Part shown: positions 35,205-63,448 of the stretch, piece by piece
How the letters are laid out: every line of letters starts with the position of its first letter
Numbering within the stretch: the stretch's first letter is position 1
DNA from: Mytilus edulis
Lineage: Eukaryota
Direction of reading: 5' to 3'
DNA length: 64,000 nucleotides
NCBI RefSeq assembly: GCF_963676685.1
Contig: NC_092347.1
Location: 73,222,001 to 73,286,000 of the forward strand
Notes under the pieces: generated by a model
The model's input: the letters and a program-made list of their open reading frames with translations, nothing else
Database searches by the model: none
Told to the model about the DNA's origin: nothing
Translations under genes and position numbers: made by a program

Positions 35205-36805
35205 ATACTCAATCTATAAGTCAGCATTATACATATGTATACCTTATCAGATTTAGGTCTGTAAGCATACACAAGTACCCGTCAAAATAAGATCAAGTCA
35301 GCATTATACATAATTATTTATACCATATTAAGGTCTCTAGGCACACACAAAAAAATGTCAGAATAAGAACAAGTCAGCAGTACATGTATACCATATAAGA
35401 TTAAGGTATATAGGCTCACAAAAAATGTCAGAATAAGAACAAGTCAGCAGTAAACATATGTATACCATATCAGATTAAGGTCTATAAGCATACAAAAAAC
35501 CGTCAGAATAAGTACAAGTGAGCATTATACATATGTATACCATATCAGATTAAGGTCTGTTAGCATACAAATACTTGTCCGAATGAGTACAAGACAGCAT
35601 TATACTGATGTATACCGTATAAGATAAAGGTCTGTAAGCGTACAAAAAACCGTCAGAATAAGTATAAGTGAGAATTATACATATGATACACTATCAGATT
35701 AAGGTCTGTAAGCATACAAAAATATCCGTCAGAATAAGTACAAGTCAGTATTATACATATGTATAAATTATCAGATTAAGGTCTGAAAGCATACAAAAAT
35801 ACCCGTCAAAATAAGTACAAGTCAGCATTATACATATGTATACCATATCAGATTAAAGTCTCTAGGCATACAAAAATACCCGTCAAAATAAGTACAAGTG
35901 AGCATTATACATATGTATACCATATCAGATTAAAGTCTCTAGGCATATGAAAATACCCGCCAGAATAAGTATAAGTGAGAATTATACATATGTATATCAT
36001 ATCAGATTAAAGTCTGTAGGCATACTAAAAGAACCGACAGAATAAGAACAAGTCAGCATTTTACATATGTATACCAAATCAGATAAAGGCATGTAAGCAT
36101 ACAAAAAACCGTCAGAATAAGTACAAGTCAGCATTTTACATAGTATGAAATTCAAAACAGTGTAGCTATGGCCATTGATTGACACATTAAAATCATTCAT
36201 TGACTGGGACAATTTAGGTGAACGTTTGTATGTAACGACCAATGCTCACTATGTACTTTTTAAAGAAACTTAAACTATGGGGTCACCAAAGGTTCTCAAA
36301 ACCTAAATAAAGTAATTCGAAAAATTAATCAGAAATAACACGATATTTTGATTTATATCAATTATATAAATCAAAACACAAAGTTTATTCCTGATTAATT
36401 TTTCGAATTATTTTATAATTAAAGGCGTTAAGAAACCTTTGGTGACCCCACAGTTTAAATGTCTATCGTAGGTACGTCATGAACAGTGGTTGTTACAGAC
36501 AAACGTTCACGTAAATTGTCCCAGTCAATGGATGATTTTGATGGGTCAATCAATGGCCACAGCTACACTGTTTTGAATTTCATACTATGTATACCATATC
36601 AGATTAAGGTCTGTAAGCGTACAAAAAAACCCGTCAGAATAAGTACAAGTCAGCATTATACATATGTATACCATACCAGATTAAGGCATGTAAGCATACA
36701 AAAAACCGTCAGAATAAGTACAAGTCAGCACTATACATATGTATACCATATCAGATTAAGGTCTGTAGGCATTCCAAAAAAAAAACGTCAGAATATTAAG
36801 TACAA
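35205..36805. repeat. Satellite of about 75-77 bp units (about 15 copies), interrupted by a fold-back MITE
   Basis: Unit AGAATAAGTACAAGTCAGCATTATACATATGTATACCATATCAGATTAAGGTCTGTAAGCATACAAAAAACCGTC. Confidence 0.92.
36143..36585. mobile_element. 443-bp fold-back MITE with TA target duplication
   Basis: Almost fully palindromic (GTATGAAATTCAAAACAGTGTAGCT...AGCTACACTGTTTTGAATTTCATAC). Removing it and one TA restores the satellite sequence TTTTACATATGTATACC. Confidence 0.88.
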
Positions 36806-38260: not shown

Positions 38261-39149
38261 TAAATCAAGAGATGTTTCAACATATAGAATTGAACATCTC
38301 TGGTTTGCCATATTAGGCTGACAAAAAAAATAATTATTTGCAACGTAATATTCCTTTATTATCACAAATAGGCACGTTGGAACTTTTTTTTAAATTTGTT
38401 CATTTAAGATCGTATAATTCTCTTACAGTATTGCACTAAATAGAAGAAAAGTACTCTCTAGAGTTATCATTTATAAACTATTTCCTTTACTCGATCCTTA
38501 ATTTTTCAGAGAATCAGAAAAAGCAAAGGCACGTGATTTCTTTTGATATACTAAAATACTTTAGCAGACCGGTACTTGATTTACATCTACAAATGAATGT
38601 AAATTGTTCAAGTGCACCGGATAAGGTTTGAATAAACATTATGGCCGAAACTGAATACATGTAGATTATGAGAGAATTTGGAAAGATGCTTTCAGTTAAA
38701 TAATACGCTTTTCCGGTGAATATTTTTATATCTATAGTTTGTATCATATTAATGAAGTCCTTGAAATGTCACGAGCTCAATAATTACTGAGATATTTTTA
38801 CTTTGATGACGCTATTTTAATGTTGACCTTATTATGGGCCAAGTTCAATGTTGATAGTATTAACGTCACTAACCAAATTGCACATATTTAGCAAAAATAG
38901 CACCGTAAATTGTATATTTTATCTGAAGAACTACAATTTTTTTTTTCCTTTTGATATTATTCACGTATTTTAAATAGGTGAACATGTTTTTATATACACA
39001 AAACGTTCAGTGTATAATTACAGATGAAGCAGCCGCTAAAAAAAGTAAAATCTACCATGCGACGTCCACAAAAAGGTCATGTACATTAACAAATGAAATA
39101 TGATACGATCAATCATTTCTTAAAAAATTAGTCTTAAGCATGGAATAAA

Positions 39150-42100
39150 GTCCAATTGCTCTGAAAATTTGATGAAAAAATCCTGTTAAAAAAAAGACGT
39201 TTATACTAAGGAAACGGTCAAACGTACGAATACAATTGTGGGGATTTTAAAGGGATAATGAAATTAACGTAATTTAAAGGAAACCATCTAATGACCGAAT
39301 ATAAAAACGTTTTTATGTAGGTGGGTTCTTGCAGCCGTTTTCTTAAAATTTACGTTAGAAATCCAGCATTCTGGTGCGTGTTTTGCGTTGATAAACCCCT
39401 AAATTTTCATGTCTAGAATGTAGAATTGTGTATAAATACTGTTCCATAAAGCTTCACATGTATTAATTGTATCAGTCAGTCGATATAATAGTTCTAGCAA
39501 TGAAGCCAGTAAGTGTCGTTTATCTGTTCATCCTTATTAATTCATTTTTTTTCTTTCTTATTATTATGTATAGATCTGAAAATGAACCAAAACAGACAAT
39601 TTTTTTTTTTTATCAATATTATTTCATTCAATTTATCTGGCACCCAACATCAATGTTTCCTTATGAAAATTAAATATTCTAAATCTATGAAAAAGATTAA
39701 GTAGTAACCAAAATGTGTGACAGTAGCAACCTAAGTATGTCTTTTCCTTGATATCGTCGCATACTATATTTATAATATTAAGGAAAAATGTATGCATCGT
39801 TAACAAATTCTCAGTTTTAATACTTACAAAGGCAGTGTAATTGTTTGATAATAAAGGTCGTCGTCGTCTTAAGGGAAGCAACCATTCAGCCTTTCGACAA
39901 GTATTACTATGAGAAAAAAATAACATGAACTCCGCTAATGAAGGAATAATAACATGTTTTCCTCCCCTTATTTCATTGACAAATTCAGTATTTAAAATTC
40001 TTCGACCTACGATAATATAAACTATAGTCTCTAAATGAAAATATCATGTTGAAAAAGAAGACGCTTTTCTCTAGAAACGGTAACATTCGCGAACACAATT
40101 TTGAGGATTTTCAGAGGCAAATGAAATTAAACCAAATATAAATGCGTTTTTATGAAGGCACGTTCTTGAAAAAGTTACAAAATTTACATGAGAATTTCAG
40201 CATACTAGTGTGTTTTTCGTTGATAATCCATAAGTTTTCATGTTCAAAATGTAGAAATTGTATAAAAACTGTTACATAAAGCTTCACATGAATCAATTGT
40301 ATCAGTTAGTCAATAGAATATTTCTACCAATGAAGCCAGTTAGTGTCGTTATATGTTTTATTTCATATTGATAAGCATTCCTATGAGGAATAACCAACAT
40401 TTATTCCTCCCCTTATTGCATATATAATATACAATTACAGTCTCTAAATGAAAATATCACGATGAAAAAGAAGACGTTTTTTTGCGGAAACTGTAACATT
40501 CGCGAACACAATTTTGGAGATTTCAAGAGGCAAATGAAATTATCAAGATGTTAAACATTGACTAACCAAATATAAACGCGTTATATTGTAGCCACGTTAT
40601 TGAAAGAGTTGATACATTTTTCTCAAAATTTACATGAGAACATCGGCATACTAGTGTGTGTTTTGCATTGATAATTCCCAAAATATAGAATTTGTATAAA
40701 TACTGTTCCATAAAGTTTACACGAATCAATTGTATCAGTCAGCCGATAGAATATTTTTAACAATAAAGCCAGTGAGTGTCGTTTACGTGTGTGTTTTTCA
40801 TATCAATTCATTTTGAACTTTTTGTTAATATCATGTTCGGATCATAACCTGAACTAAATATCATTTGATTAAATTTATTTGGCACCCTACATCCATATTC
40901 CCTTATGACAAATAGATATTTAAAATCCATGAAAGACGATTAAATACTAACTTCAACATGCCACAGTAGCAACCAAAGTGTGTCTTTTTCTACAATACGT
41001 TTCATATAATATTTACACTATTAAGGAAGAAAGGTATACATCGCTAATAAATTGTAGCATACAAGAAGCGAGGTCAGTGCAATTGATCAGTCTGTCAACA
41101 AAAAGATTGGATAAGATGCTGGTCTATTTTCTAAAATCCAATCACCTAATTACTTTATGCTTGTGGATTTTATTAAAAGGTTTAATTGTCCGTTATCTCT
41201 GTTAAACTGATATTAAGTTAAATCAAAACCAAAAGTTGCAATTATCAAATATATAGAACCATACTATTACGGTACACTCGGAAGGGGCGTAACACGAAAT
41301 TCCTTATTTACATTTAGGGGTTTTATACTCATGTTTAATATCTACAAAGGCAGTGTGATTATTTGATAAAATTGTTCGTCTTGAAGGAATCAACAATTCA
41401 GCCTTTTGACAAGTATTCCTATGAGGGAAAACAACATGTACCCCTCCCCTTATTGCAGTGACCAATCCAGATTTTTTTTATTCATCGACCTACGATACAC
41501 TTATAAACTCGAAAGAATTTAAAACATATTATTTTTTCCGCTTGGTCTTAGATGCACATAAACCTTATAACTAACCAAAAGTGGACAAGAAACTTTATCA
41601 AACATATGTTTGGTTAGGTATGAAATAACACAACATTGATAATAATTATATGTGGAGGTGAACTACTTCGGACATTTCCTAATAATAAGTGGGAATAGTA
41701 TCTGTGACATCCGCCGCCCATGCAAATTTAACAAATGTTAAGCATATTTTGTGAGATAACACTTATAGTCCTGAATGAAAATATCGTGTTGAACAAAAGT
41801 AGACATTTTACGCAGAAAACGGTAAAACTTACGAAAACAATTTTGGGGATTTTGACAGGCAAATGAAATTAGCGTCAAGTATAACAACTACTGTCCAAAT
41901 ATTAGAGCGCTTTTATGTAGGCGCATGCTTGAAGGAGTTACCCTTTTCTTAAAATTTACATTAAAATTCCAGCATACTGGTGTTTGTTTTGCGTTAATAA
42001 TCCTTAAATTTCCGTGTCCAGACTTTTGTATAAATACTGTTCCATAAAGCTTCACATGAATAAATTGTTTCACTCAGCCGATAGACTATTTCTAGCAATG

Positions 42101-42670
42101 AAGCCAGTAAGTGTCGTTCATGTTTAGCCATAGTAATTTATTATATTTTTTCTAAATATTATCGTCGGATCAGAATATGAACTTAACCATACAAAATGTT
42201 CTTTTTTATAAATATTTTTGACTCAACTTATCTGGCACCCTACATTCATATTTCCTTATGAAAATTTGATATTTTAAATCCATGATTAACGATGAAGTAG
42301 TTACGATAATTTTAGACAGTAGCAACCAAAGTATGTCTTTTCCTTTGTTTCGTTGCATACATGTACTATATTTACAATATTAAGGAAGAAAGGTATATGC
42401 ATCGATAATACATTGTAGTATACAAATAATTTGCTTGATGCCACATTTTAAAAACTATCTATGTGTTAGTCTTAAAATGTATTTTCCTTTTATGGAATAC
42501 AATAAGCATGTCAGTATAATTGACCAGTTTGTCTTAAGAAAATTGGATAAGATAGTGGTCTATCTCCAAAATCCAATCATTTAATTACTTTAGTTATGCA
42601 TGTTGCTTTACTTTAAAGGTTAAAGTGTTCTCTCTGTTTAACTGATATTAAGTTAAATTAAAACACAAGT
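39150..42670 (+). promoter_or_regulatory. Array of four diverged copies of the gene 2 promoter/exon-1 cassette
   Basis: TATAAA(T/A)A at 39431, 40261, 40695 and 42029. Each is followed 68-69 nt later by ATG AAG CCA|GT(A/T/G)AGT at 39500, 40330, 40763 (ATG mutated to ATA) and 42098. Flanking sequence is also repeated. Confidence 0.75.
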
Positions 42671-45600
42671 CTTTTCCCAATGTTCAAATTGTACGATATC
42701 AGAACGGATCAAGCCCGAGTGGGTCTACTAATTGTATTGTTTCTTGTTCCATTGAAGGTTATTAACATCCGTATATGTGGAAGGATCGAGTGACGTTTAT
42801 TCATAGTCATTTATTTCGATCATTTTAACGATTGCCCTTTTTTTTATATTTAAATTAATTGTTAAATTGCACTCACTTTATCATATAAACCTTATATTTT
42901 TCAGACTCTCCTTATCTCGATTTTATGTCTTGGATATTTTGTACGGACATCGTATGCACTGCCTATTTTATGCAGTAACGAATCACCGGGAAACATCTTG
43001 AGATTACGTATACTTGACAGAATACATTCCAATGCACTGAGTTTAGCAGAATCTTTAAAACTAAAAACAGTAAGTAAAAATCATGGTATTTATCATAAAT
43101 GGCATTCAAAATGCTAAACATAGTGCATAGTAACAAATCATGTATGTGTTAAAGTATTCAAGACGTATGAAAGTTAAAAAAACAAATCGACAAAAGGGAG
43201 CAAATATTACACAAATTGATTATTAACCTATCAATTGAGTTGCTATTTATCGCCTCTCTTTCGCTATGTCAGTCTATTTGTACTAATTACGGAAACTACT
43301 GCTGAGCAAAAAAAGGTGGAAAATAATATTGTGCTTATTGTACCTGAATTTGCATTGGTTCAAACACCTCATTAGCAAGAAACATGATTAAGATTTAAAC
43401 AACCACTTTATTTATCAAATCTATTTTACCCTTCCCCTAAAACAAACTATAAAATGAAACACATGTTAATTTTCATGTTTTGTAATTTAATAAACCAAAT
43501 AAAAGCTTTTACCATACATCTTTTTTTAAGTGTCAGAATCAAGGTACTGCGAAAGTTTATAACATTTGGGTATATTCTAATCAACTGAGTCTTATGATTT
43601 GAGAATTCAAAATGTATTCCGTAGTGAAAAATGGTAAACATCAATTTTAATTGTCTTTTTTGGGGGAAAATGTCAATCTTAAGCTGGAGTTAGAAAGTGC
43701 AGTAATTGTTTTGTACTAACAGTAATATCAACATGTGAAGATTTTAAAAACACTGCGATCTTATTTAGTAATTACCGGATTTGTTTTCACATAAGCAACA
43801 CGACGGGTGCCACATGTGGAGCAGGATCTGCTTACCCTTCCGGAGCACCTGAGATCACCCCTAGTTTTTGGTGGGGTTCGTGTTTTTTATTCTTTAGTTT
43901 TCTATGTTGTGTCATCTGACTATTGTTTGTCTGTTTTTATTTTTAGCCATGGCGTTGCCAGTTTATTTCCGATTGATGAGTTTGACTGTCCCTTTGGTAT
44001 CTTTCGTCCCTCTTTTAGTATATAAAAGTACGATCTCTGTTTAATTTTTATTTAAATTTTAATTTTTAATTCAATACAATTGTTATCAAAAATATCTTTC
44101 AGAGTTCACATGTCTCAGACTTGCTTAAACAACTTTTAGACCATGCAGCTCCTCCATCTGGATTCCCTAGCATATCATCTAATGCAAGCTGCTCTGACTG
44201 TAATCAGGTATGTTATCAATTATAAGAATCATTTGCAGCATTTAGCATTCAATACAAGAGGTTACATGTATTCTTTAAAAGAAAATATATTTTGGTATAT
44301 AACCTTATTTCTGACACACGAGAGAGCAAATGCGATGACAGATAATCTTTTTTTCTGACACAAAAGAGTGCAAATACGATGACGGCTATTGATAAACCTA
44401 TTTATTACACATGAGAGTGCTAATGAGTGATGACGGTTGTTGATAAAGTAAAGATGACACATGTTTTTATCATTTGATTGACGTTGCATGATTAGTGAGT
44501 GGCAAGGGAACAATGTTATATACAATCAAGACGCCATCAAGGAAGCAAAAACAATAGATAGGTTATGCGATGTAGGTCGACTAGGATGAGAGGAGTCAAA
44601 TGTATTTCTGTCATGGATAAATAAAGATAGAAAGATAGAAATAGAAAAATGTGGTGTGAGTGCCAATGAGACAAATCTCCATATAAATAACAATTTATAA
44701 AAGTAAACCATTATAAATCAATTGACGGCCTTCAACAAGGAGCCTTGGCTCACACCGAACAACAAGCTATAAAGGGCCCCAAAATTACTAGTTTGAAACC
44801 ATTCAAACGGGAAAACCAACTGTCTATAAAAAAACGAGAAACAAGAAACACTTATAAATTACATAAACAAACGACAACTACTGTACATCAAATTCATGAC
44901 TTAGGACAGGTGCAAACATTTGCAGCCTGATTAAACGTTTTAATGGTACCAAACCTTCTCCCCTTTTCTGAAACAGTAGTATAACATCACAACATAGAAA
45001 AACACACGATAAAATAGCAATTGGAAGGCTTAACTCAAACAAAAGAACTGTTTTGTGCATATTGGATTTAACTCAATTGTCATTTAAGTGGTTGGCAAGG
45101 CACACACATATCTTTTTTAAATCTTCGTCTTTCCGGTTGAAAGCATCTGTTTCAAATTGCCATTTTTTTTTATTTGTCAACTGTTGTTTTTTGGGTAAAT
45201 TTGTTACTAGTAGTGTCTATTGGCCATGTACATTAAACCTACCCGCGTTTTAAATTTCCAGTTCACGAATCATTTGAATGAAACATGAATAAACAAAGTC
45301 ATGTGATTGTTAATGAAAAACCACCCCTTCTTACAAACAGTTTCTTACTTCAATCAAGCAATCAACAAAGAAATTGTTAAAAAATGTTAACTCATACATA
45401 TCACTGTTCTGAAGTCATTTCTGTCTCTTTCTCTGAACGAATTATACTACTAGTAGGTTTTTTAAAGCCATCTTTTAGTTGTTTCCTACATAAAATAAAA
45501 CTTTGTTCTTTTAAAAACATTCGAGTACATTAAGGGCATGAACACGATATTTACATATGAATTAGATTAACACATATATAAACTAATTTTTCATACTTAA

Positions 45601-46028
45601 CGTAACATATCTTAAAAACTGCATTTTGATTATGTGGAAATAGTATGCAAACCATATAATAAAGTAAAATAAATGTTTTATACTTAGGGCGACTATATTC
45701 TATTCATTCAATTCAAAATTGATTATTATTGCAGACAAGCTGTTTTGAAGAGGACCTTGCACCAATTGAAAATTTGATGAGGTTCATAAACAGTTATATG
45801 TCTTCAAGTTATTCTACAGAAATTGTGAGCATTACATCCGAGTTATCTGTGATCCGCGAACTTATGGGTGGAGATGCAATAGATATGTCAAATATATTTC
45901 AATTAAAGAGTTTAACCCAGAACACGGATACAGATTACATTGCTGCAAAGGATACAGATTACATTATTGCAAAAGATACTCTCAATTTTATCAATAAACT
46001 TAAACAACGCTACGAAACACGTGTTTAA
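42098..46028 (+). CDS. Gene 2: secreted helical cytokine-like paralog, 4 exons, 190 aa
   Basis: Exons 42098-42106 (MKP|gtaagt), 42905-43069, 44103-44207 and 45735-46028, all phase 0 and GT-AG: MKPTLLISILCLGYFVRTSYA/LPILCSNESPGNILRLRILDRIHSNALSLAESLKLKTSSHVSDLLKQLLDHAAPPSGFPSISSNASCSDCNQTSCFEEDLAPIENLMRFINSYMSSSYSTEIVSITSELSVIRELMGGDAIDMSNIFQLKSLTQNTDTDYIAAKDTDYIIAKDTLNFINKLKQRYETRV*. Exons 2-3 are clearly homologous to gene 3, and the GFP and DYIxxKDT motifs are shared with gene 1. Confidence 0.85.
43770..44015 (+). mobile_element. Repeat family B (PLE 3' end) in gene 2 intron 2
   Basis: Near-identical to 56240-56492, the 3' UTR of the PLE at 55538. Further copies are at about 6670-6905, 14845-14980, 17835-18010, 27065-27260 (all minus) and 54195-54388. 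Confidence 0.85.
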
Positions 46029-47407
46029 AGTGTCACGTGTTATTTTCCTATAAGTATTATGGGTAACTAACTTTGTTCAGTATCTGAACTTCCTGTATTA
46101 TCTAATATTTTGGTAAATATTGTATAGAGATATATTTAAATTAAAATTTAATTTAATTTTCATAAATTGTATGTACTAATGAATATAAATGAATAATTGT
46201 GTACCGACATAAATCTATATATATAAATATAGGAATACATTTTTTTCACTTCTCATTGGTCTTTTTGTCCTTGTTTACAAATTAATGATTCAATAGACAG
46301 AGTTACAGTTTGTCACACTTTGGTTTTTTTTATTAAATTTGCCTGAGATATACGAATTTAAATGATTTGGATAATTGCTAGTTGTGTTTTTCAATTACTA
46401 ATATTTATCAATTAAATAGCTATTTTTTTGTGGTCTTAACGATCTCGACCATATATAGCAACTCTTGTTTTTGTTAGCTATTGTTTACCATGTGTTTGAT
46501 CATTTTGGGTAATACACTTTATGATATTTTGCCATACTTAACGTATATTTTGTTATTTGATTCTAATATGTTTTTTAATGTTATGTCTTTTTGGGCATTG
46601 AATCTTTATACCTTTTATTGCATGACTTTAATTTAAAATTCGTTTATAAGTAAAGAATATATATCTACACGTATGACTATATCTTATCTTTATTTCACTC
46701 AAAAAAAAGAAGAAAACACCGAAAAAGAAACACAAGAACAAAACATAAGCAATTGATAACATGATCATAAACATGTAGTTCGGCATTTCGTCAATCATTG
46801 TTTATCTCATTATTTCAATTTACTTCATTCAGCTTGATTAAGTTGGAAACATGCTGCAAAAAACATCTGTATATTTAGACAGTTTTGATAAGGCTGATGT
46901 TTTCACAAGATCGTGCAAGCTTATTCGTCCCTTTTTCTGCAATTGTATCGTATCTCCTTTGTGGAGACATTATGGTAAACCTATATATAAAAAGAAATTC
47001 GGTCATGTAACTTTAAAATGTCTATAAAGCAATATTCTTACGGATTATTTATCTCCTATCTGATACAACATCCGATAGCCTGTTATATATAGTATCATGA
47101 TGTTCTTGATAGAGAATAGTTCCTAGTATGAAAAGTATGACGAAAATACAAAATCCAAGGTAAATTCAAAGAAGGAAGAGTCAAACTCAAACCTTATGAA
47201 AATGTTTTTTTTAAACCTGGTCGTATAGCTAGCTAAACCTCTCACTTGTATGACATTTTTTTTAGTTCCATTATATTGACAATATTGGTTGAGCAACTCA
47301 AACAGACAAACAGGCCGTACCTTGACCTATAATGGTTTACTTTTATAAATTGGCATTTGGATGGAGAGTTGCCTCATTGGCACTCATATCACATCTTCCT
47401 ATAACTA

Positions 47408-61164: not shown

Positions 61165-61210
61165 GTGAAGATATTCCCAACGGAATTTTCCAAACTCTAT
61201 ATAAATTTAA
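61165..61210 (+). promoter_or_regulatory. Putative gene 3 promoter: kB site(s) + TATA box
   Basis: GGAATTTTCC at 61182-61191 and GATATTCCC at 61170-61178 lie immediately before TATATAAA (61198-61205), about 70 nt upstream of the ATG. This is the same TATA-ATG spacing as in gene 2. Confidence 0.6.
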
Positions 61211-61270
61211 GTCCAGGATTCACTATTTAATAACTATTTAATATCATTTCAAGCACCAATCATTTATACT

Positions 61271-63448
61271 ATGGACTCCGTAAGTTTTATTTTACACATG
61301 TCTAGATGGATATTTTCATCGAACAAAATATAGTCCTCACTATGTACGATTCGGTTGAATTCCAAATTACAGTTTCTTGCGGGATCAGTTTTGTTCACAA
61401 AGCAAATTATTAACAATAATTTTCAAAATTAATTGAGTATATGTCTTAAGGAAGAACCACGAAAGGCTGAAGCACACAATTATGTTTAATTTGTACTGAC
61501 AGATGTTCATATAACAAATAGATCTCTTTCCTAAAATTCAACATTTTTCTTTTTCCTGTTAGTTCATAAATATAAAGCTAAAATTAAAACTTAGTGAACT
61601 TATTGTACAATGGAGGAAGTTTAGGGTGATTAAGGTCGAATGACCTTTTATGAATGAAACAAAGATGATGTTACACGAGGAAGAAACGCAGCAAAGCAAG
61701 TACCGAAACACTACTGAATATCTTGAGAATTTACATTCCTCAAGTCTTCTATGAAATAGTTATAATTACATTACGTTACAAAACTTTTTGCATTCATTAG
61801 AATAAATCTAACACAAATTTCCTTATTTAAATCACTACATTTACTAATGCTGTGATTACTATACTACCTATGGTTAATTCTTAGTTAAAGTGTGTTTTTA
61901 TTTGAACTTCTTTGTTTCGTACTTTATTATTTTTGATGGAATTGGAAGTTTTACATTCATGGAATGTTTTAGAGGGAACGTAATAATTCGGTAAACAAAT
62001 AGTATATTTATAAACTCCAAATTGATGTTCTATGTGAATTTATGTAGCAAGTGGGTTGATATAATCAGTTTATCCTTTTCGTTTGTTATACGATGTGTCA
62101 GTAGCCCACAATGTAGTTCATTTCCGTCAATTTACAGTTTTGAATGGTTTAACCTTATTTAACAATATATAATGATTGAGATATCAAATCCATTCAATTT
62201 CTTTGATACATTGTTTAGTAAAATTAAGTTCTTACAGTTTATAGCATGAAGCTCTATGTACCATTAATATACAGGTTAAACTTACGGATCAATATAATAT
62301 ATCATTGTCATCCCTACCAATATCAGTTCTACTGTTTTTACATTAAATTGCAAACTTTTATTGCATTATCATAGTATCATATACACACTATTTTCATGTT
62401 TTACGAATAACAATGTTAAAATTATGAACGAAGCTTTCCGATTTCTGGGGAAATGTGTTATAAACGTTTATAATTTTCTGACATTGCATTTTTCTTTCAA
62501 ACGGCATTTAAATATTACTACAAATTACTACAATTATGATTATCAAAATGTTTACTCAACAATAAAACCATTAAAGAATCCTTTTTTTTTTTTTTTTAAT
62601 GACGTTACCTGGAATTGACATTGCGTGAAATACCCTTTTGTTATACTTGCTAGATAAAGACAGCAGGAAATGTTCTAACTTAATTAAACATGTTAAACAA
62701 ATCGTGATCCCCTGTAGGATTAGGTTCAAAACTCACGAGACTGCAACCATTATTATATATTAATTTTTAAATGTAAACATATATTTATCATTTTATTTTT
62801 CAGTCATTACAAATCGTCTCCTTTTTATGTGTTATGTATCTTGCATTGCCATCATTTGCAATGCCCATTACCTGCGATCCAGAAAACTACACGCGATTAC
62901 AGATTAAGGACAGAATACATACTCGTCTTATGCCATCAGCTGAGGCCTTAAAAAGCAACATAGTACGTAAATACTGAATATATTTAGTTAATTATTCAAA
63001 TTGATTTCAATTAATTCTTGAATGACTTTTAGAGTCACAGTTTAGAAAGCAAAGATACGTCTAATGGAAAGAAAATAAAACAATATTAAATTTTTCTAAT
63101 ATCAAATGTATGAATTGTCCCATTTGTATAATAAATTGTTTTTTTTTTTTAAATATTAACATCTTCTGGCACTTGCTAACTATCGAACACGGTCTTGGTT
63201 GCTGATTTAGTTTGTAACCTGGAATTGTCTTCTCTTAATTTTGATATGACCTTCGAACAGTGGTATACTACCAATGATTTTATTTAGTTTATTTACTCGT
63301 TCGTCACTTATTTTACGTAACATAACTATCATTTATGTTTATTTAGGTTTCCAAATTTCCACTCTGGGTTTTACCATATTTAGACGCTGCAGCATTACCA
63401 GGATTTCCAAACATATCATCTAATGGAAAATGTTCACTTTGTACACAG
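61271..63448 (+). CDS. Gene 3 (3'-partial): secreted helical cytokine-like paralog of gene 2; exons 1-3, last exon beyond the window
   Basis: Exons 61271-61279 (MDS|gtaagt), 62804-62962 and 63347-63448, phase 0: MDSSLQIVSFLCVMYLALPSFA/MPITCDPENYTRLQIKDRIHTRLMPSAEALKSNIVSKFPLWVLPYLDAAALPGFPNISSNGKCSLCTQ. It aligns with gene 2 (PIxC, RLxIxDRIH, AExLK, LDxAA, GFPxISSN, CSxCxQ). Confidence 0.85.

What the first reader, a model, noticed from the sequence alone, without database searches (positions are those of the whole stretch)
39150..42670. Four tandem copies of a complete promoter + 9-nt coding exon 1 feeding one gene body
Seen: what looks like a degenerate repeat is the 5' end of gene 2 duplicated four times. 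Each copy keeps a TATA box, a 68-69 nt spacing and ATG-AAG-CCA followed by a splice donor: 39500 GTAAGT, 40330 GTTAGT, 40763 GTGAGT with ATG changed to ATA, and 42098 GTAAGT. No exon 2 copy was seen between them. Three cassettes could splice in phase 0 to exon 2 (42905) and give the identical precursor. The ATG-less copy would give a non-coding or signal-less transcript. Inference: these are alternative promoters that diversify cytokine regulation without changing the protein, or relics of unequal crossing-over.
Basis: partly seen in the sequence, partly recalled or inferred. Interest (0 to 1): 0.8.

Follow-up and report, generated by a model that had tools for sequence, protein, structure and literature searches.

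The report
Fourfold duplicated promoter and first exon
A mussel gene for a secreted IL-6-like protein has its promoter and tiny first exon repeated four times in a row, but nothing yet shows that any copy other than the one nearest the gene is used.

Summary
Observation confirmed in every detail. Four homologous cassettes hold a TATA box, a 68-69 nt spacing, ATG-AAG-CCA (ATA in copy 3) and a GT donor. They lie at 39172-39809, 40012-40368, 40424-41064 and 41759-42425, upstream of one exon 2 at 42905.

The array occurs only here in the 1.37 Gb genome. It is not an assembly artefact: DNA contigs of other runs bridge c1 to c2 and c2 to c3.

The gene is a four-exon, 190-aa secreted protein. Its M. 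galloprovincialis orthologue folds like IL-6/IL-23/LIF cytokines. A 9-nt coding exon 1 was found, once each, in four of the five paralogues with an exon-2 match; only this gene has four.

The 85-column block from TATA to donor has 66 of 85 invariant columns against 120 of 270 upstream (p = 6e-8). The deficit sits on old branches, and c2 and c3 show decay.

Expression is untested. The one RNA run laid had essentially no reads on the gene. A public M. edulis protein carries a leader that only the proximal copy c4 encodes.

Verdict: an old tandem duplication. c4 is the working promoter and c1 a possible alternative. Modest interest.

The parts
39172..39809 (+). Cassette c1: about 330 nt of upstream DNA, TATA 39431-39437, ATG-AAG-CCA 39500-39508, donor GTAAGT 39509-39514, then intron block B.
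   Evidence: X6 DNA contig 39431-40199 shows no substitution in 39431-39514.
39807..40023 (+). Block C, the junction segment between c1 and c2. It is homologous to 41325-41509, and a part of it to 40368-40420.
   Evidence: In the whole-genome search with 41230-41760, block C was matched only inside this locus.
40012..40368 (+). Cassette c2, short and lacking intron block B. TATAAAA 40261-40267, ATG 40330-40332, exon end 40338, donor GTTAGT 40339-40344.
   Evidence: Position 40341 reads A, giving GTAAGT, in X6, X7 and X8.
40424..41064 (+). Cassette c3. TATA 40695-40701, ATA in place of ATG at 40763-40765, exon end 40771, donor GTGAGT 40772-40777, a 1-nt deletion in the leader, then intron block B.
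41059..41759 (+). Spacer between c3 and c4. Block D 41059-41229 is homologous to 42497-42664. Block C is 41325-41509. Segment 41509-41759 has no other copy.
41759..42425 (+). Cassette c4, the proximal copy. TATA 42029-42035, in-frame upstream ATG 42056-42058, ATG 42098-42100, exon end 42106, donor GTAAGT 42107-42112, then intron block B.
   Evidence: The M. edulis protein P0023 starts with the translation of this leader.
42905..43069 (+). Exon 2, 165 nt in phase 0: hydrophobic signal-peptide core and the start of helix A.
   Evidence: Collinear with P0003 and P0004. Near-identical in order to the matching part of P0020.
44103..44207 (+). Exon 3, 105 nt.
45735..46028 (+). Exon 4, with stop codon TAA at 46026-46028. 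It holds a 24-nt tandem repeat at 45926-45979 that doubles DTDYI(A/I)AK.

Best explanation
The array is an old tandem segmental duplication, produced by repeated unequal crossing-over. The duplicated unit holds the promoter, the 9-nt coding first exon and the 5' part of intron 1 of a mussel gene. That gene encodes a secreted four-helix, IL-6-like protein.

The proximal copy c4 is the working promoter and first exon. Its donor at 42106/42107 splices to exon 2 at 42905.

The distal copy c1 keeps every signal intact and may still fire as an alternative promoter, splicing 39508 to 42905 to give the same protein.

c2 and c3 are decaying. c3 has lost the start codon. c2 has lost intron block B, has a weak donor in this haplotype, and varies between individuals.

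Shown here: the duplication, its uniqueness, its presence in other DNA samples, the gene model, and the extra conservation of the core.

Inferred: which copies are transcribed.
For: Homology and structure:
- The four copies are 69-77% identical over 320-660 nt.
- The unit is found nowhere else in 1.37 Gb.
- In the upstream flank, 13 of 200 ungapped columns split (c1,c4)|(c2,c3), and none shows either other two-by-two split.

Other DNA samples:
- X6 contigs span 39431-40199 and 40170-40523, bridging c1 to c2 and c2 to c3.
- X8 covers c1, c2 and c3.
- X7, under another organism label, covers c2 and c4.

Gene model:
- P0020 (M. galloprovincialis VDI61982.1, 190 aa) starts MKPTLLIS. It follows exon 1+2+3+4 in order, with seven residue differences from the window by my reading.
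- P0023 (M. edulis CAG2248677.1, 204 aa) begins MNKLFHSADRLFLAMKP. This equals the translation of the c4 leader from 42056. The c1 leader gives ATG TAT TAA, the c2 leader a different peptide, and c3 has no ATG.

Family architecture:
- A TATA box or a 9-nt ATG exon with a GTAAGT donor occurs once in four paralogues.
- Their cassettes have no second copy in the loci searched.

Conservation of the core:
- 66 of 85 columns are invariant against 120 of 270 upstream (p = 6e-8), the top of 271 windows.
- Internal branch: 0 of 84 against 13 of 200 (p = 0.012).
- c1 branch: 3 of 84 against 24 of 200 (p = 0.027).
Against: - No transcript was seen for any cassette. RNA run X10 had depth 0 (at most 0.1 in two bins) on the cassettes and exon 2, at about 6 in 100 of the run read. 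The bins that hold exon 3 also hold a high-copy repeat or intron, so exon 3 could not be read apart.
- The public models are gene predictions. A predictor would pick the nearest first exon anyway.
- On the c2, c3 and c4 terminal branches the core is not significantly slower than the flank: 4 of 84 against 7 of 200, 4 of 84 against 15 of 200, and 3 of 84 against 12 of 200. Sequence therefore cannot show that c4 itself is constrained today, nor that c2 is dead.
- In three other samples the c2 donor is the consensus GTAAGT, so c2 may work in other haplotypes.
- The counts are small.
Confidence: 0.6

Rival explanations
1. All three ATG-bearing cassettes (c1, c2, c4) are regularly used alternative promoters. 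They drive the same cytokine precursor under different stimuli or in different tissues. c3 gives a non-coding transcript.
For: - Every copy keeps the TATA box, the 68-69 nt spacing and a GT donor.
- The core block is the best conserved part of the repeat.
- The lineage leading to c2 and c3, which is not the proximal copy, has 0 of 84 changes in the core against 13 of 200 in the flank. This suggests past selection on an upstream copy.
- The c2 donor is GTAAGT in X6, X7 and X8.
Against: - No RNA evidence.
- c2 and c3 are as diverged in the core (0.869) as in the flank (0.858).
- The c2 core differs from the window at 3 listed places in X6, one of them in its TATA box, and at 8 in X8.
- c3 lacks the start codon.
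- The public model uses the c4 leader.
Confidence: 0.2
2. The upstream cassettes are not productive promoters. They act as extra copies of the regulatory DNA, like shadow enhancers or added transcription-factor binding sites, for the c4 promoter.
For: Upstream blocks are shared by all four copies, for example alignment columns 76-120 and 211-270 at 0.76-0.80 pairwise identity. A GGGGATTTT word lies at the same place in c1 and c4. Its resemblance to a Rel/kappaB site is recalled, not tested.
Against: The best conserved part is the block from TATA through the leader to the donor, not the upstream blocks. An enhancer role does not explain conservation of the ATG, the two codons and the donor. The GGGGATTTT count is not above chance by itself: 14 of 100 shuffles reach 2.
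Confidence: 0.12
3. The array is an assembly artefact, with collapsed or expanded haplotypes.
For: Mussel genomes are highly heterozygous. This is recalled, not tested.
Against: The copies differ by 23-31% and by large indels, which is not allelic. Independent DNA contigs from other runs bridge neighbouring copies.
Confidence: 0.02

Closest known systems
Tandem arrays of variable first exons, each with its own promoter, spliced to common downstream exons (UGT1, clustered protocadherins). Seen as search listing and abstract starts of PMC1885805 and PMC3325998.
   Same: A head-to-tail array of homologous first exons. Each is preceded by promoter-like DNA and followed by a splice donor. None has an acceptor. 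One shared exon 2 lies downstream.
   Different: The coding part is only 9 nt and identical (MKP), so the array cannot diversify the mature protein. There are four copies, one without a start codon. Use of the upstream copies is not shown.
Origin of alternative exons by tandem exon duplication. This general idea is recalled. My phrase search for it found no paper.
   Same: Unequal crossing-over copies an exon with its flanks. The copies then diverge or decay.
   Different: Here the promoter is duplicated together with the exon, so the choice would be made at transcription initiation and not at splicing.
IL-6 / IL-12-family long-chain helical cytokines and insect Unpaired. Earlier scan note s1-834672 on gene 1 of this window.
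   Same: - A secreted protein of about 190 aa.
- Four long helices with long A-B and C-D loops.
- The best fold matches are IL-23 p19 (Z 12.0), IL-27 p28, OSM, LIF, CLCF1, IL-11, IL-12 p35 and IL-6.
- A DYI-x-KD motif is shared with gene 1.
   Different: - No Pfam family matches.
- Sequence similarity to gene 1 is weak (E 0.042, 26% over 80 aa).
- The exon 4 profile finds only 18 proteins at E <= 0.001.
- Foldseek gives no match at E <= 0.001.
- Gene 2 lacks two cysteines that the five paralogues keep in exon 4.

Membership tests
Variable/alternative first-exon array (UGT1 / protocadherin type organisation) | Tandem array of homologous first exons upstream of shared constant exons | tested here: met
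   Four homologous cassettes and a single exon 2.
Variable/alternative first-exon array (UGT1 / protocadherin type organisation) | Each first exon has its own functional promoter | tested here: inconclusive
   A TATA box sits at a fixed 68-69 nt from the ATG in all four copies, and the core is conserved. No transcription start data were available, and RNA run X10 gave no reads.
Variable/alternative first-exon array (UGT1 / protocadherin type organisation) | Each first exon is spliced to the common second exon in real transcripts | tested here: inconclusive
   Donors are present in all four (GTAAGT, GTTAGT, GTGAGT, GTAAGT). Only the MKP-exon 2 junction is seen, in public predicted proteins, and the c4 leader in one of them. 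No junction reads were seen.
Variable/alternative first-exon array (UGT1 / protocadherin type organisation) | The first exons encode different protein parts | tested here: not met
   The coding part is ATG-AAG-CCA in c1, c2 and c4, and ATA-AAG-CCA in c3.
Long-chain four-helix (class I, IL-6-like) cytokine | Four-helix up-up-down-down bundle with long crossover loops | tested here: met
   AlphaFold2 model of the natural orthologue P0020: pLDDT 81.3, pTM 0.77, helices 31-59, 94-114, 117-136 and 158-187. Ranks 1-29 of 48,161 chains are helical cytokines or hormones with Z 12.0-6.3, and the first other fold has Z 6.2. The tool's caveat is that Z under about 13 can be generic for helical bundles.
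Long-chain four-helix (class I, IL-6-like) cytokine | Significant sequence similarity to a described cytokine family | tested here: not met
   No Pfam hit above cut-off. The exon 4 profile finds only 18 proteins; those later named by a source are Mytilus proteins and none is named as a described cytokine. Similarity to gene 1 has E 0.042.
Long-chain four-helix (class I, IL-6-like) cytokine | Binds a gp130/Domeless-type receptor and activates JAK/STAT | not testable with these tools
   Needs binding and signalling assays.

The most novel reading that the evidence does not exclude
A mussel IL-6/Unpaired-like cytokine gene is driven by an array of promoters that arose by duplication. c1, c2 and c4 would respond to different stimuli or tissues and yield the same precursor, or precursors with different N-terminal leaders if the in-frame upstream ATG of c2 and c4 is transcribed. 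The ATG-less c3 would give a regulatory non-coding transcript.
Probability: 0.15. Interest if true: 0.55.

Novelty: new member of a known kind. Interest (0 to 1): 0.3.

Why it matters
If the upstream cassettes fire, this would be a compact, natural case of regulatory diversification by promoter duplication. The gene is a candidate ligand of the molluscan JAK/STAT pathway. A 2026 paper reports IL6 only in vertebrates while tracing IL6R back to Mollusca (PMC13203501; I saw the search listing and the start of the abstract).

The four copies also form a built-in series for asking which promoter elements selection keeps.

If only c4 fires, the array is an ordinary relic of unequal crossing-over. 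It is then mainly a warning for gene annotation: any of three identical ATG-AAG-CCA exons can be picked as exon 1.

Tried and rejected
- **RNA test.** The look-up of sequencing runs with exon 4 and its 3' flank listed no holder on record as RNA. The three holders I laid (X6, X7, X8) covered introns and intergenic DNA evenly, so they are DNA. The RNA raw-read run X10 gave no reads outside two high-copy repeats.
I could not fetch the contigs behind P0001 and P0002, nor the M. edulis and M. galloprovincialis loci.
- **Dispersed repeat or transposon:** rejected. The cassette and its spacer match only this locus.
- **Structured RNA:** no Rfam family in 38500-46500.
- **Pfam** on the three exon translations: nothing above cut-off.
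- **Metagenome pattern scan** for the exon 1 and donor motif: 0 matches.
- **Are the motifs (TATA, ATG, codons, donor) better kept than the leader between them?** No: 3 of 22 against 16 of 63 variable columns, p = 0.37. The whole block is conserved, not just the motifs.
- **Paralogue promoters** show no DNA similarity to the gene 2 cassettes; the best E values are 0.016-0.056. No exon 1 of this pattern was found for the paralogue at C4:73343481.
- **Literature.** Two searches for mussel Unpaired or JAK ligands gave nothing relevant. A search with 'alternative first exons', 'tandem duplication' and 'alternative promoters' held 0 papers.
- **Supplements** are closed. The RNA support for the public models VDI61982.1 and CAG2248677.1 may sit in supplements of genome papers that I did not consult.
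- **Joined step.** Searches used the exons apart, as separate rows in A3, and the fold used the natural public protein P0020.
Full report
**What is there**

The window is AT-rich eukaryotic DNA at about 31% G+C. It lies at C4:73222001-73286000 of a 1.37 Gb genome. Proteins that match its genes come from Mytilus species.

| Copy | TATA box | Start codon | Exon end | Donor |
|---|---|---|---|---|
| c1 | TATAAAT 39431 | ATG 39500 | 39508 | GTAAGT |
| c2 | TATAAAA 40261 | ATG 40330 | 40338 | GTTAGT |
| c3 | TATAAAT 40695 | ATA 40763 | 40771 | GTGAGT |
| c4 | TATAAAT 42029 | ATG 42098 | 42106 | GTAAGT |

The TATA-to-ATG distance is 69, 69, 68 and 69 nt.

The copies are homologous well beyond these motifs.
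- The repeat finder gives a four-copy family over the core and three- or four-copy families on both sides.
- blastn of 39101-43100 against the window gives 69-77% identity over 320-660 nt, with E from 1e-55 to 1e-136, and no hit outside 39172-42664.

**Anatomy of the array**

Each unit has three or four parts:
- about 330 nt of upstream DNA plus exon 1 (block A);
- about 280 nt of intron (block B, missing in c2);
- in c3 and c4, a further block D (41059-41229 and 42497-42664);
- in c1, c2 and c3, a junction block C (39807-40023, 40368-40420 and 41325-41509) that abuts the next unit.

c3 is followed by 250 nt with no other copy (41509-41759).

All but the last unit end in block C. This pattern fits a first duplication whose junction acquired C, followed by further unequal crossovers. 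That history is inference.

Neither the cassette nor the spacer 41230-41760 has another copy in the genome, so it is not a mobile element. No Rfam family matches 38500-46500.

**The gene**

The gene model, by eye:

| Exon | Coordinates | Size |
|---|---|---|
| 1 | ends 42106 | 9 nt coding |
| 2 | 42905-43069 | 165 nt |
| 3 | 44103-44207 | 105 nt |
| 4 | 45735-46028 | includes stop codon TAA |

Searched apart, they gave these results.
- They hit nothing in Pfam above cut-off.
- Exon 4 found only two 76-aa fragments in the word search.
- An alignment that holds the three exon translations as separate rows under a full-length relative (A3) found P0020. This is VDI61982.1, 'Hypothetical predicted protein [Mytilus galloprovincialis]', 190 aa, beginning MKPTLLIS. 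It follows exon 1+2+3+4 in order, with seven residue differences from the window by my reading.

The model therefore equals a public annotation.

Its 90% cluster holds one more member, P0023 (CAG2248677.1, M. edulis, 204 aa), whose N-terminus is MNKLFHSADRLFLAMKPT.
- This is the translation of the c4 leader from an in-frame ATG at 42056-42058.
- The c1 leader reads ATG TAT TAA.
- The c2 leader would read MNQLYQLVNRIFLPMKP.
- c3 has ACG there (read).

That public model therefore uses a c4-type first exon. Both entries are predictions, and I could not see what RNA evidence stood behind them.

**Family context**

The exon 4 translation has five paralogues in the genome, four on the same chromosome within 150 kb and one on C12.

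The exon 2 translation matches four of these five. In each, exon 2 starts at an acceptor in the same phase, just before the hydrophobic core.

Four paralogues have one 9-nt coding exon 1 with a GTAAGT donor:

| Place | Exon 1 | TATA box |
|---|---|---|
| window 61271 | ATGGACTCC | 61198-61205 |
| C4:73295965 | ATGAAATCA | found |
| C12:30709362 | ATGAAATTA | not found with my pattern |
| C4:73408294 | ATGATTTCA | found |

- For the paralogue at C4:73343481 my pattern found none.
- None of the four cassettes has a second direct copy in the sequence searched: the 64-kb window for one, 10-kb loci for two and a 3.8-kb locus for one, where the only extra hit was a 96-nt inverted repeat. None resembles the gene 2 cassettes at DNA level.
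- The public M. trossulus protein P0003 contains the residues MIS of one such microexon joined to exon 2.

The microexon architecture is thus ancestral to the family. The fourfold repeat is peculiar to gene 2 and younger than the gene duplications.

**Is it a cytokine?**

Sequence evidence:
- A profile of six exon 4 translations (A2) found 18 proteins at E <= 0.001 among 1.84 billion representatives. That library carries no names.
- Those of the 18 that later calls name are Mytilus proteins, and no source names one as a described cytokine.

Fold evidence:
- AlphaFold2 on the natural protein P0020 with a 19-row family alignment gave pLDDT 81.3 and pTM 0.77. It has four long helices and long A-B and C-D loops.
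- Foldseek ranks IL-6, G-CSF and IL-11 first, but with E 0.12-0.33 and none at E <= 0.001.
- The search that does not lean on Foldseek puts IL-23 p19 (Z 12.0), IL-27 p28 (11.1), OSM (11.1), LIF (11.0), CLCF1 (10.9), IL-11 (10.8), IL-12 p35 (10.8), growth hormone (10.5) and IL-6 (10.3) on top. The first non-cytokine appears at rank 30 with Z 6.2.
- The tool warns that Z under about 13 may be generic for helical bundles.

I accept 'IL-6-like helical cytokine fold'. Membership of a described family is not shown.

Gene 2 differs from its five paralogues in two ways. It lacks two conserved cysteines in exon 4, and it has an 8-residue duplication.

**Is the core conserved beyond the rest?**

Yes. 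In the four-way alignment A1, the 85 columns from GTATAAA to the end of the donor have 66 invariant columns against 120 of 270 upstream (Fisher p = 6e-8). This is the best of 271 windows of that length. Against the intron block in c1, c3 and c4 the count is 70 of 85 against 180 of 315 (p = 1.4e-5). On ungapped columns the contrast is 18 of 84 variable against 80 of 200 (p = 0.0026).

Two qualifications apply.
- An intron stretch (c1 39621-39680) is nearly as conserved, at 0.84-0.87 among three copies.
- Within the core, the motifs are not better kept than the leader: 3 of 22 against 16 of 63 variable columns, p = 0.37.

Sorting the changes by branch:

| Branch | Core | Upstream flank | p |
|---|---|---|---|
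| Internal, (c1,c4)\|(c2,c3) | 0 of 84 | 13 of 200 | 0.012 |
| c1 | 3 of 84 | 24 of 200 | 0.027 |
| c2 | 4 of 84 | 7 of 200 | not significant |
| c3 | 4 of 84 | 15 of 200 | not significant |
| c4 | 3 of 84 | 12 of 200 | not significant |

c2 and c3 are as alike in the flank (0.858) as in the core (0.869).

My reading is that for much of the array's history more than one copy's core was kept by selection. That includes the lineage of a non-proximal copy. Since c2 and c3 separated, at least one of them has drifted. The counts are small.

**Other individuals**

The three contig runs I laid proved to be DNA, because they cover introns and intergenic DNA.
- X6 contigs span 39431-40199 and 40170-40523, so neighbouring copies are joined in another data set. 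X6 also shows fixed differences from the window.
- X8 covers c1, c2 and c3.
- X7, under another organism label, covers c2 (40290-40480) and c4 (41765-42118).
- The array is therefore real and shared.
- At 40341 all three runs read A, so the c2 donor is GTAAGT outside this assembly.
- All five substitutions of the X6 contig over c1 lie outside 39431-39514. The places of three of its four gaps were not shown.
- The c2 core differs at 3 listed places in X6, one of them inside its TATA box at 40266, and at 8 in X8.
- These are hints of relaxed constraint on c2. They are not a test, because 114 rows of differences were not shown.

**Expression**

This is the weak point. No run on record as RNA held exon 4.

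The RNA raw-read run X10, read at about 6 in 100, had depth 0 (at most 0.1 in two bins) on the cassettes and exon 2. The bins that hold exon 3 are filled by a high-copy repeat or by intron, so exon 3 could not be read apart.

**Mechanism proposed**

Transcription from c4 starts about 30 nt after the TATA box, near 42055-42062. This rests on the usual TATA-to-start distance, which is recalled. It gives a leader of about 40 nt and the 9-nt coding part, and the donor at 42107 pairs with the acceptor before 42905.

A transcript from c1 or c2 would run through the downstream cassettes. These have donors but no acceptors, so it could splice straight to 42905 and give the same MKP precursor.

A c3 transcript has no start codon. 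The first ATG in exon 2 is out of frame (read).

If initiation lies upstream of the in-frame ATG at 42056 (c4) or at the matching place in c2, the precursors would carry different 14-residue extensions. c1 would instead have a two-codon upstream reading frame.

All of this is inference from sequence.

**Comparison and verdict**

The organisation matches arrays of variable first exons with their own promoters (UGT1, protocadherins; abstract starts of PMC1885805 and PMC3325998). It differs in that the coding part is identical, and use of the copies is unproven.

I file it as a new member of a known kind: a tandemly duplicated promoter plus first exon. My estimates are:
- about 0.6 that c4 is the main or only active copy;
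- about 0.2 that several copies are in regular use;
- about 0.12 for an enhancer-like role of the upstream copies.

Interest is modest at 0.3. The kind is known, however, and the functional claim rests on no transcript.

Noticed in passing
window 61198-61285 and 62804-62953: A third gene of the family starts here. It has TATATAAA at 61198, ATG-GAC-TCC at 61271-61279, a GTAAGT donor, and exon 2 from 62804. Its exon 4 lies just past the window end, at C4:73286041. It has a single cassette only.
   Followed up: partly
G000 C4:73286041, 73300015, 73346406, 73411172 and C12:30712815 (L006-L010): Gene 2 belongs to a cluster of at least five paralogues on the same chromosome, plus one on another chromosome. 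All have the same exon phases. Three of those outside the window have a single 9-nt coding first exon.
   Followed up: partly
window 45926-45979: A 24-nt tandem repeat (2.2 copies) inside exon 4 doubles the peptide DTDYI(A/I)AK, which holds the family's DY-x-x-AKD motif. The five paralogues have one copy.
   Followed up: partly
window 45735-46025 (exon 4): Gene 2 has lost two cysteines that all five paralogues keep: DCEPL has become DLAPI, and MGCEA has become MGGDA. This may mean a lost disulphide or relaxed constraint on gene 2.
   Followed up: no
window 43772-44017 and 44635-45100: Two very high-copy repeats lie in introns 2 and 3. Summed contig depths run into the millions in the DNA runs, and the RNA run also gives reads on them.
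   Followed up: no
window 35218-36146 and 36582-36781: A 75-77 nt satellite-like tandem array (12.3 and 2.6 copies, 82-88% matches) lies about 3 kb upstream of the cassette array.
   Followed up: no
window 40069-40400 in run X8: The X8 contig over c2 has a depth of 20.2 against 2.5-5 for neighbouring X8 contigs. It differs from the window at 15 letters and 10 gaps. This may be extra or collapsed cassette copies in that individual.
   Followed up: no
window 39240-39248 and 41845-41853: GGGGATTTT occurs only twice in the 64 kb window, at homologous places of c1 and c4. c2 and c3 have one-base and two-base variants of it. Its resemblance to a Rel/kappaB site is recalled, not tested, and the count alone is not above chance.
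   Followed up: partly
window 39621-39680, 40864-40925, 42216-42280: An intron block shared by c1, c3 and c4 is almost as conserved as the promoter core, at 0.84-0.87 pairwise identity. The reason is unknown.
   Followed up: no
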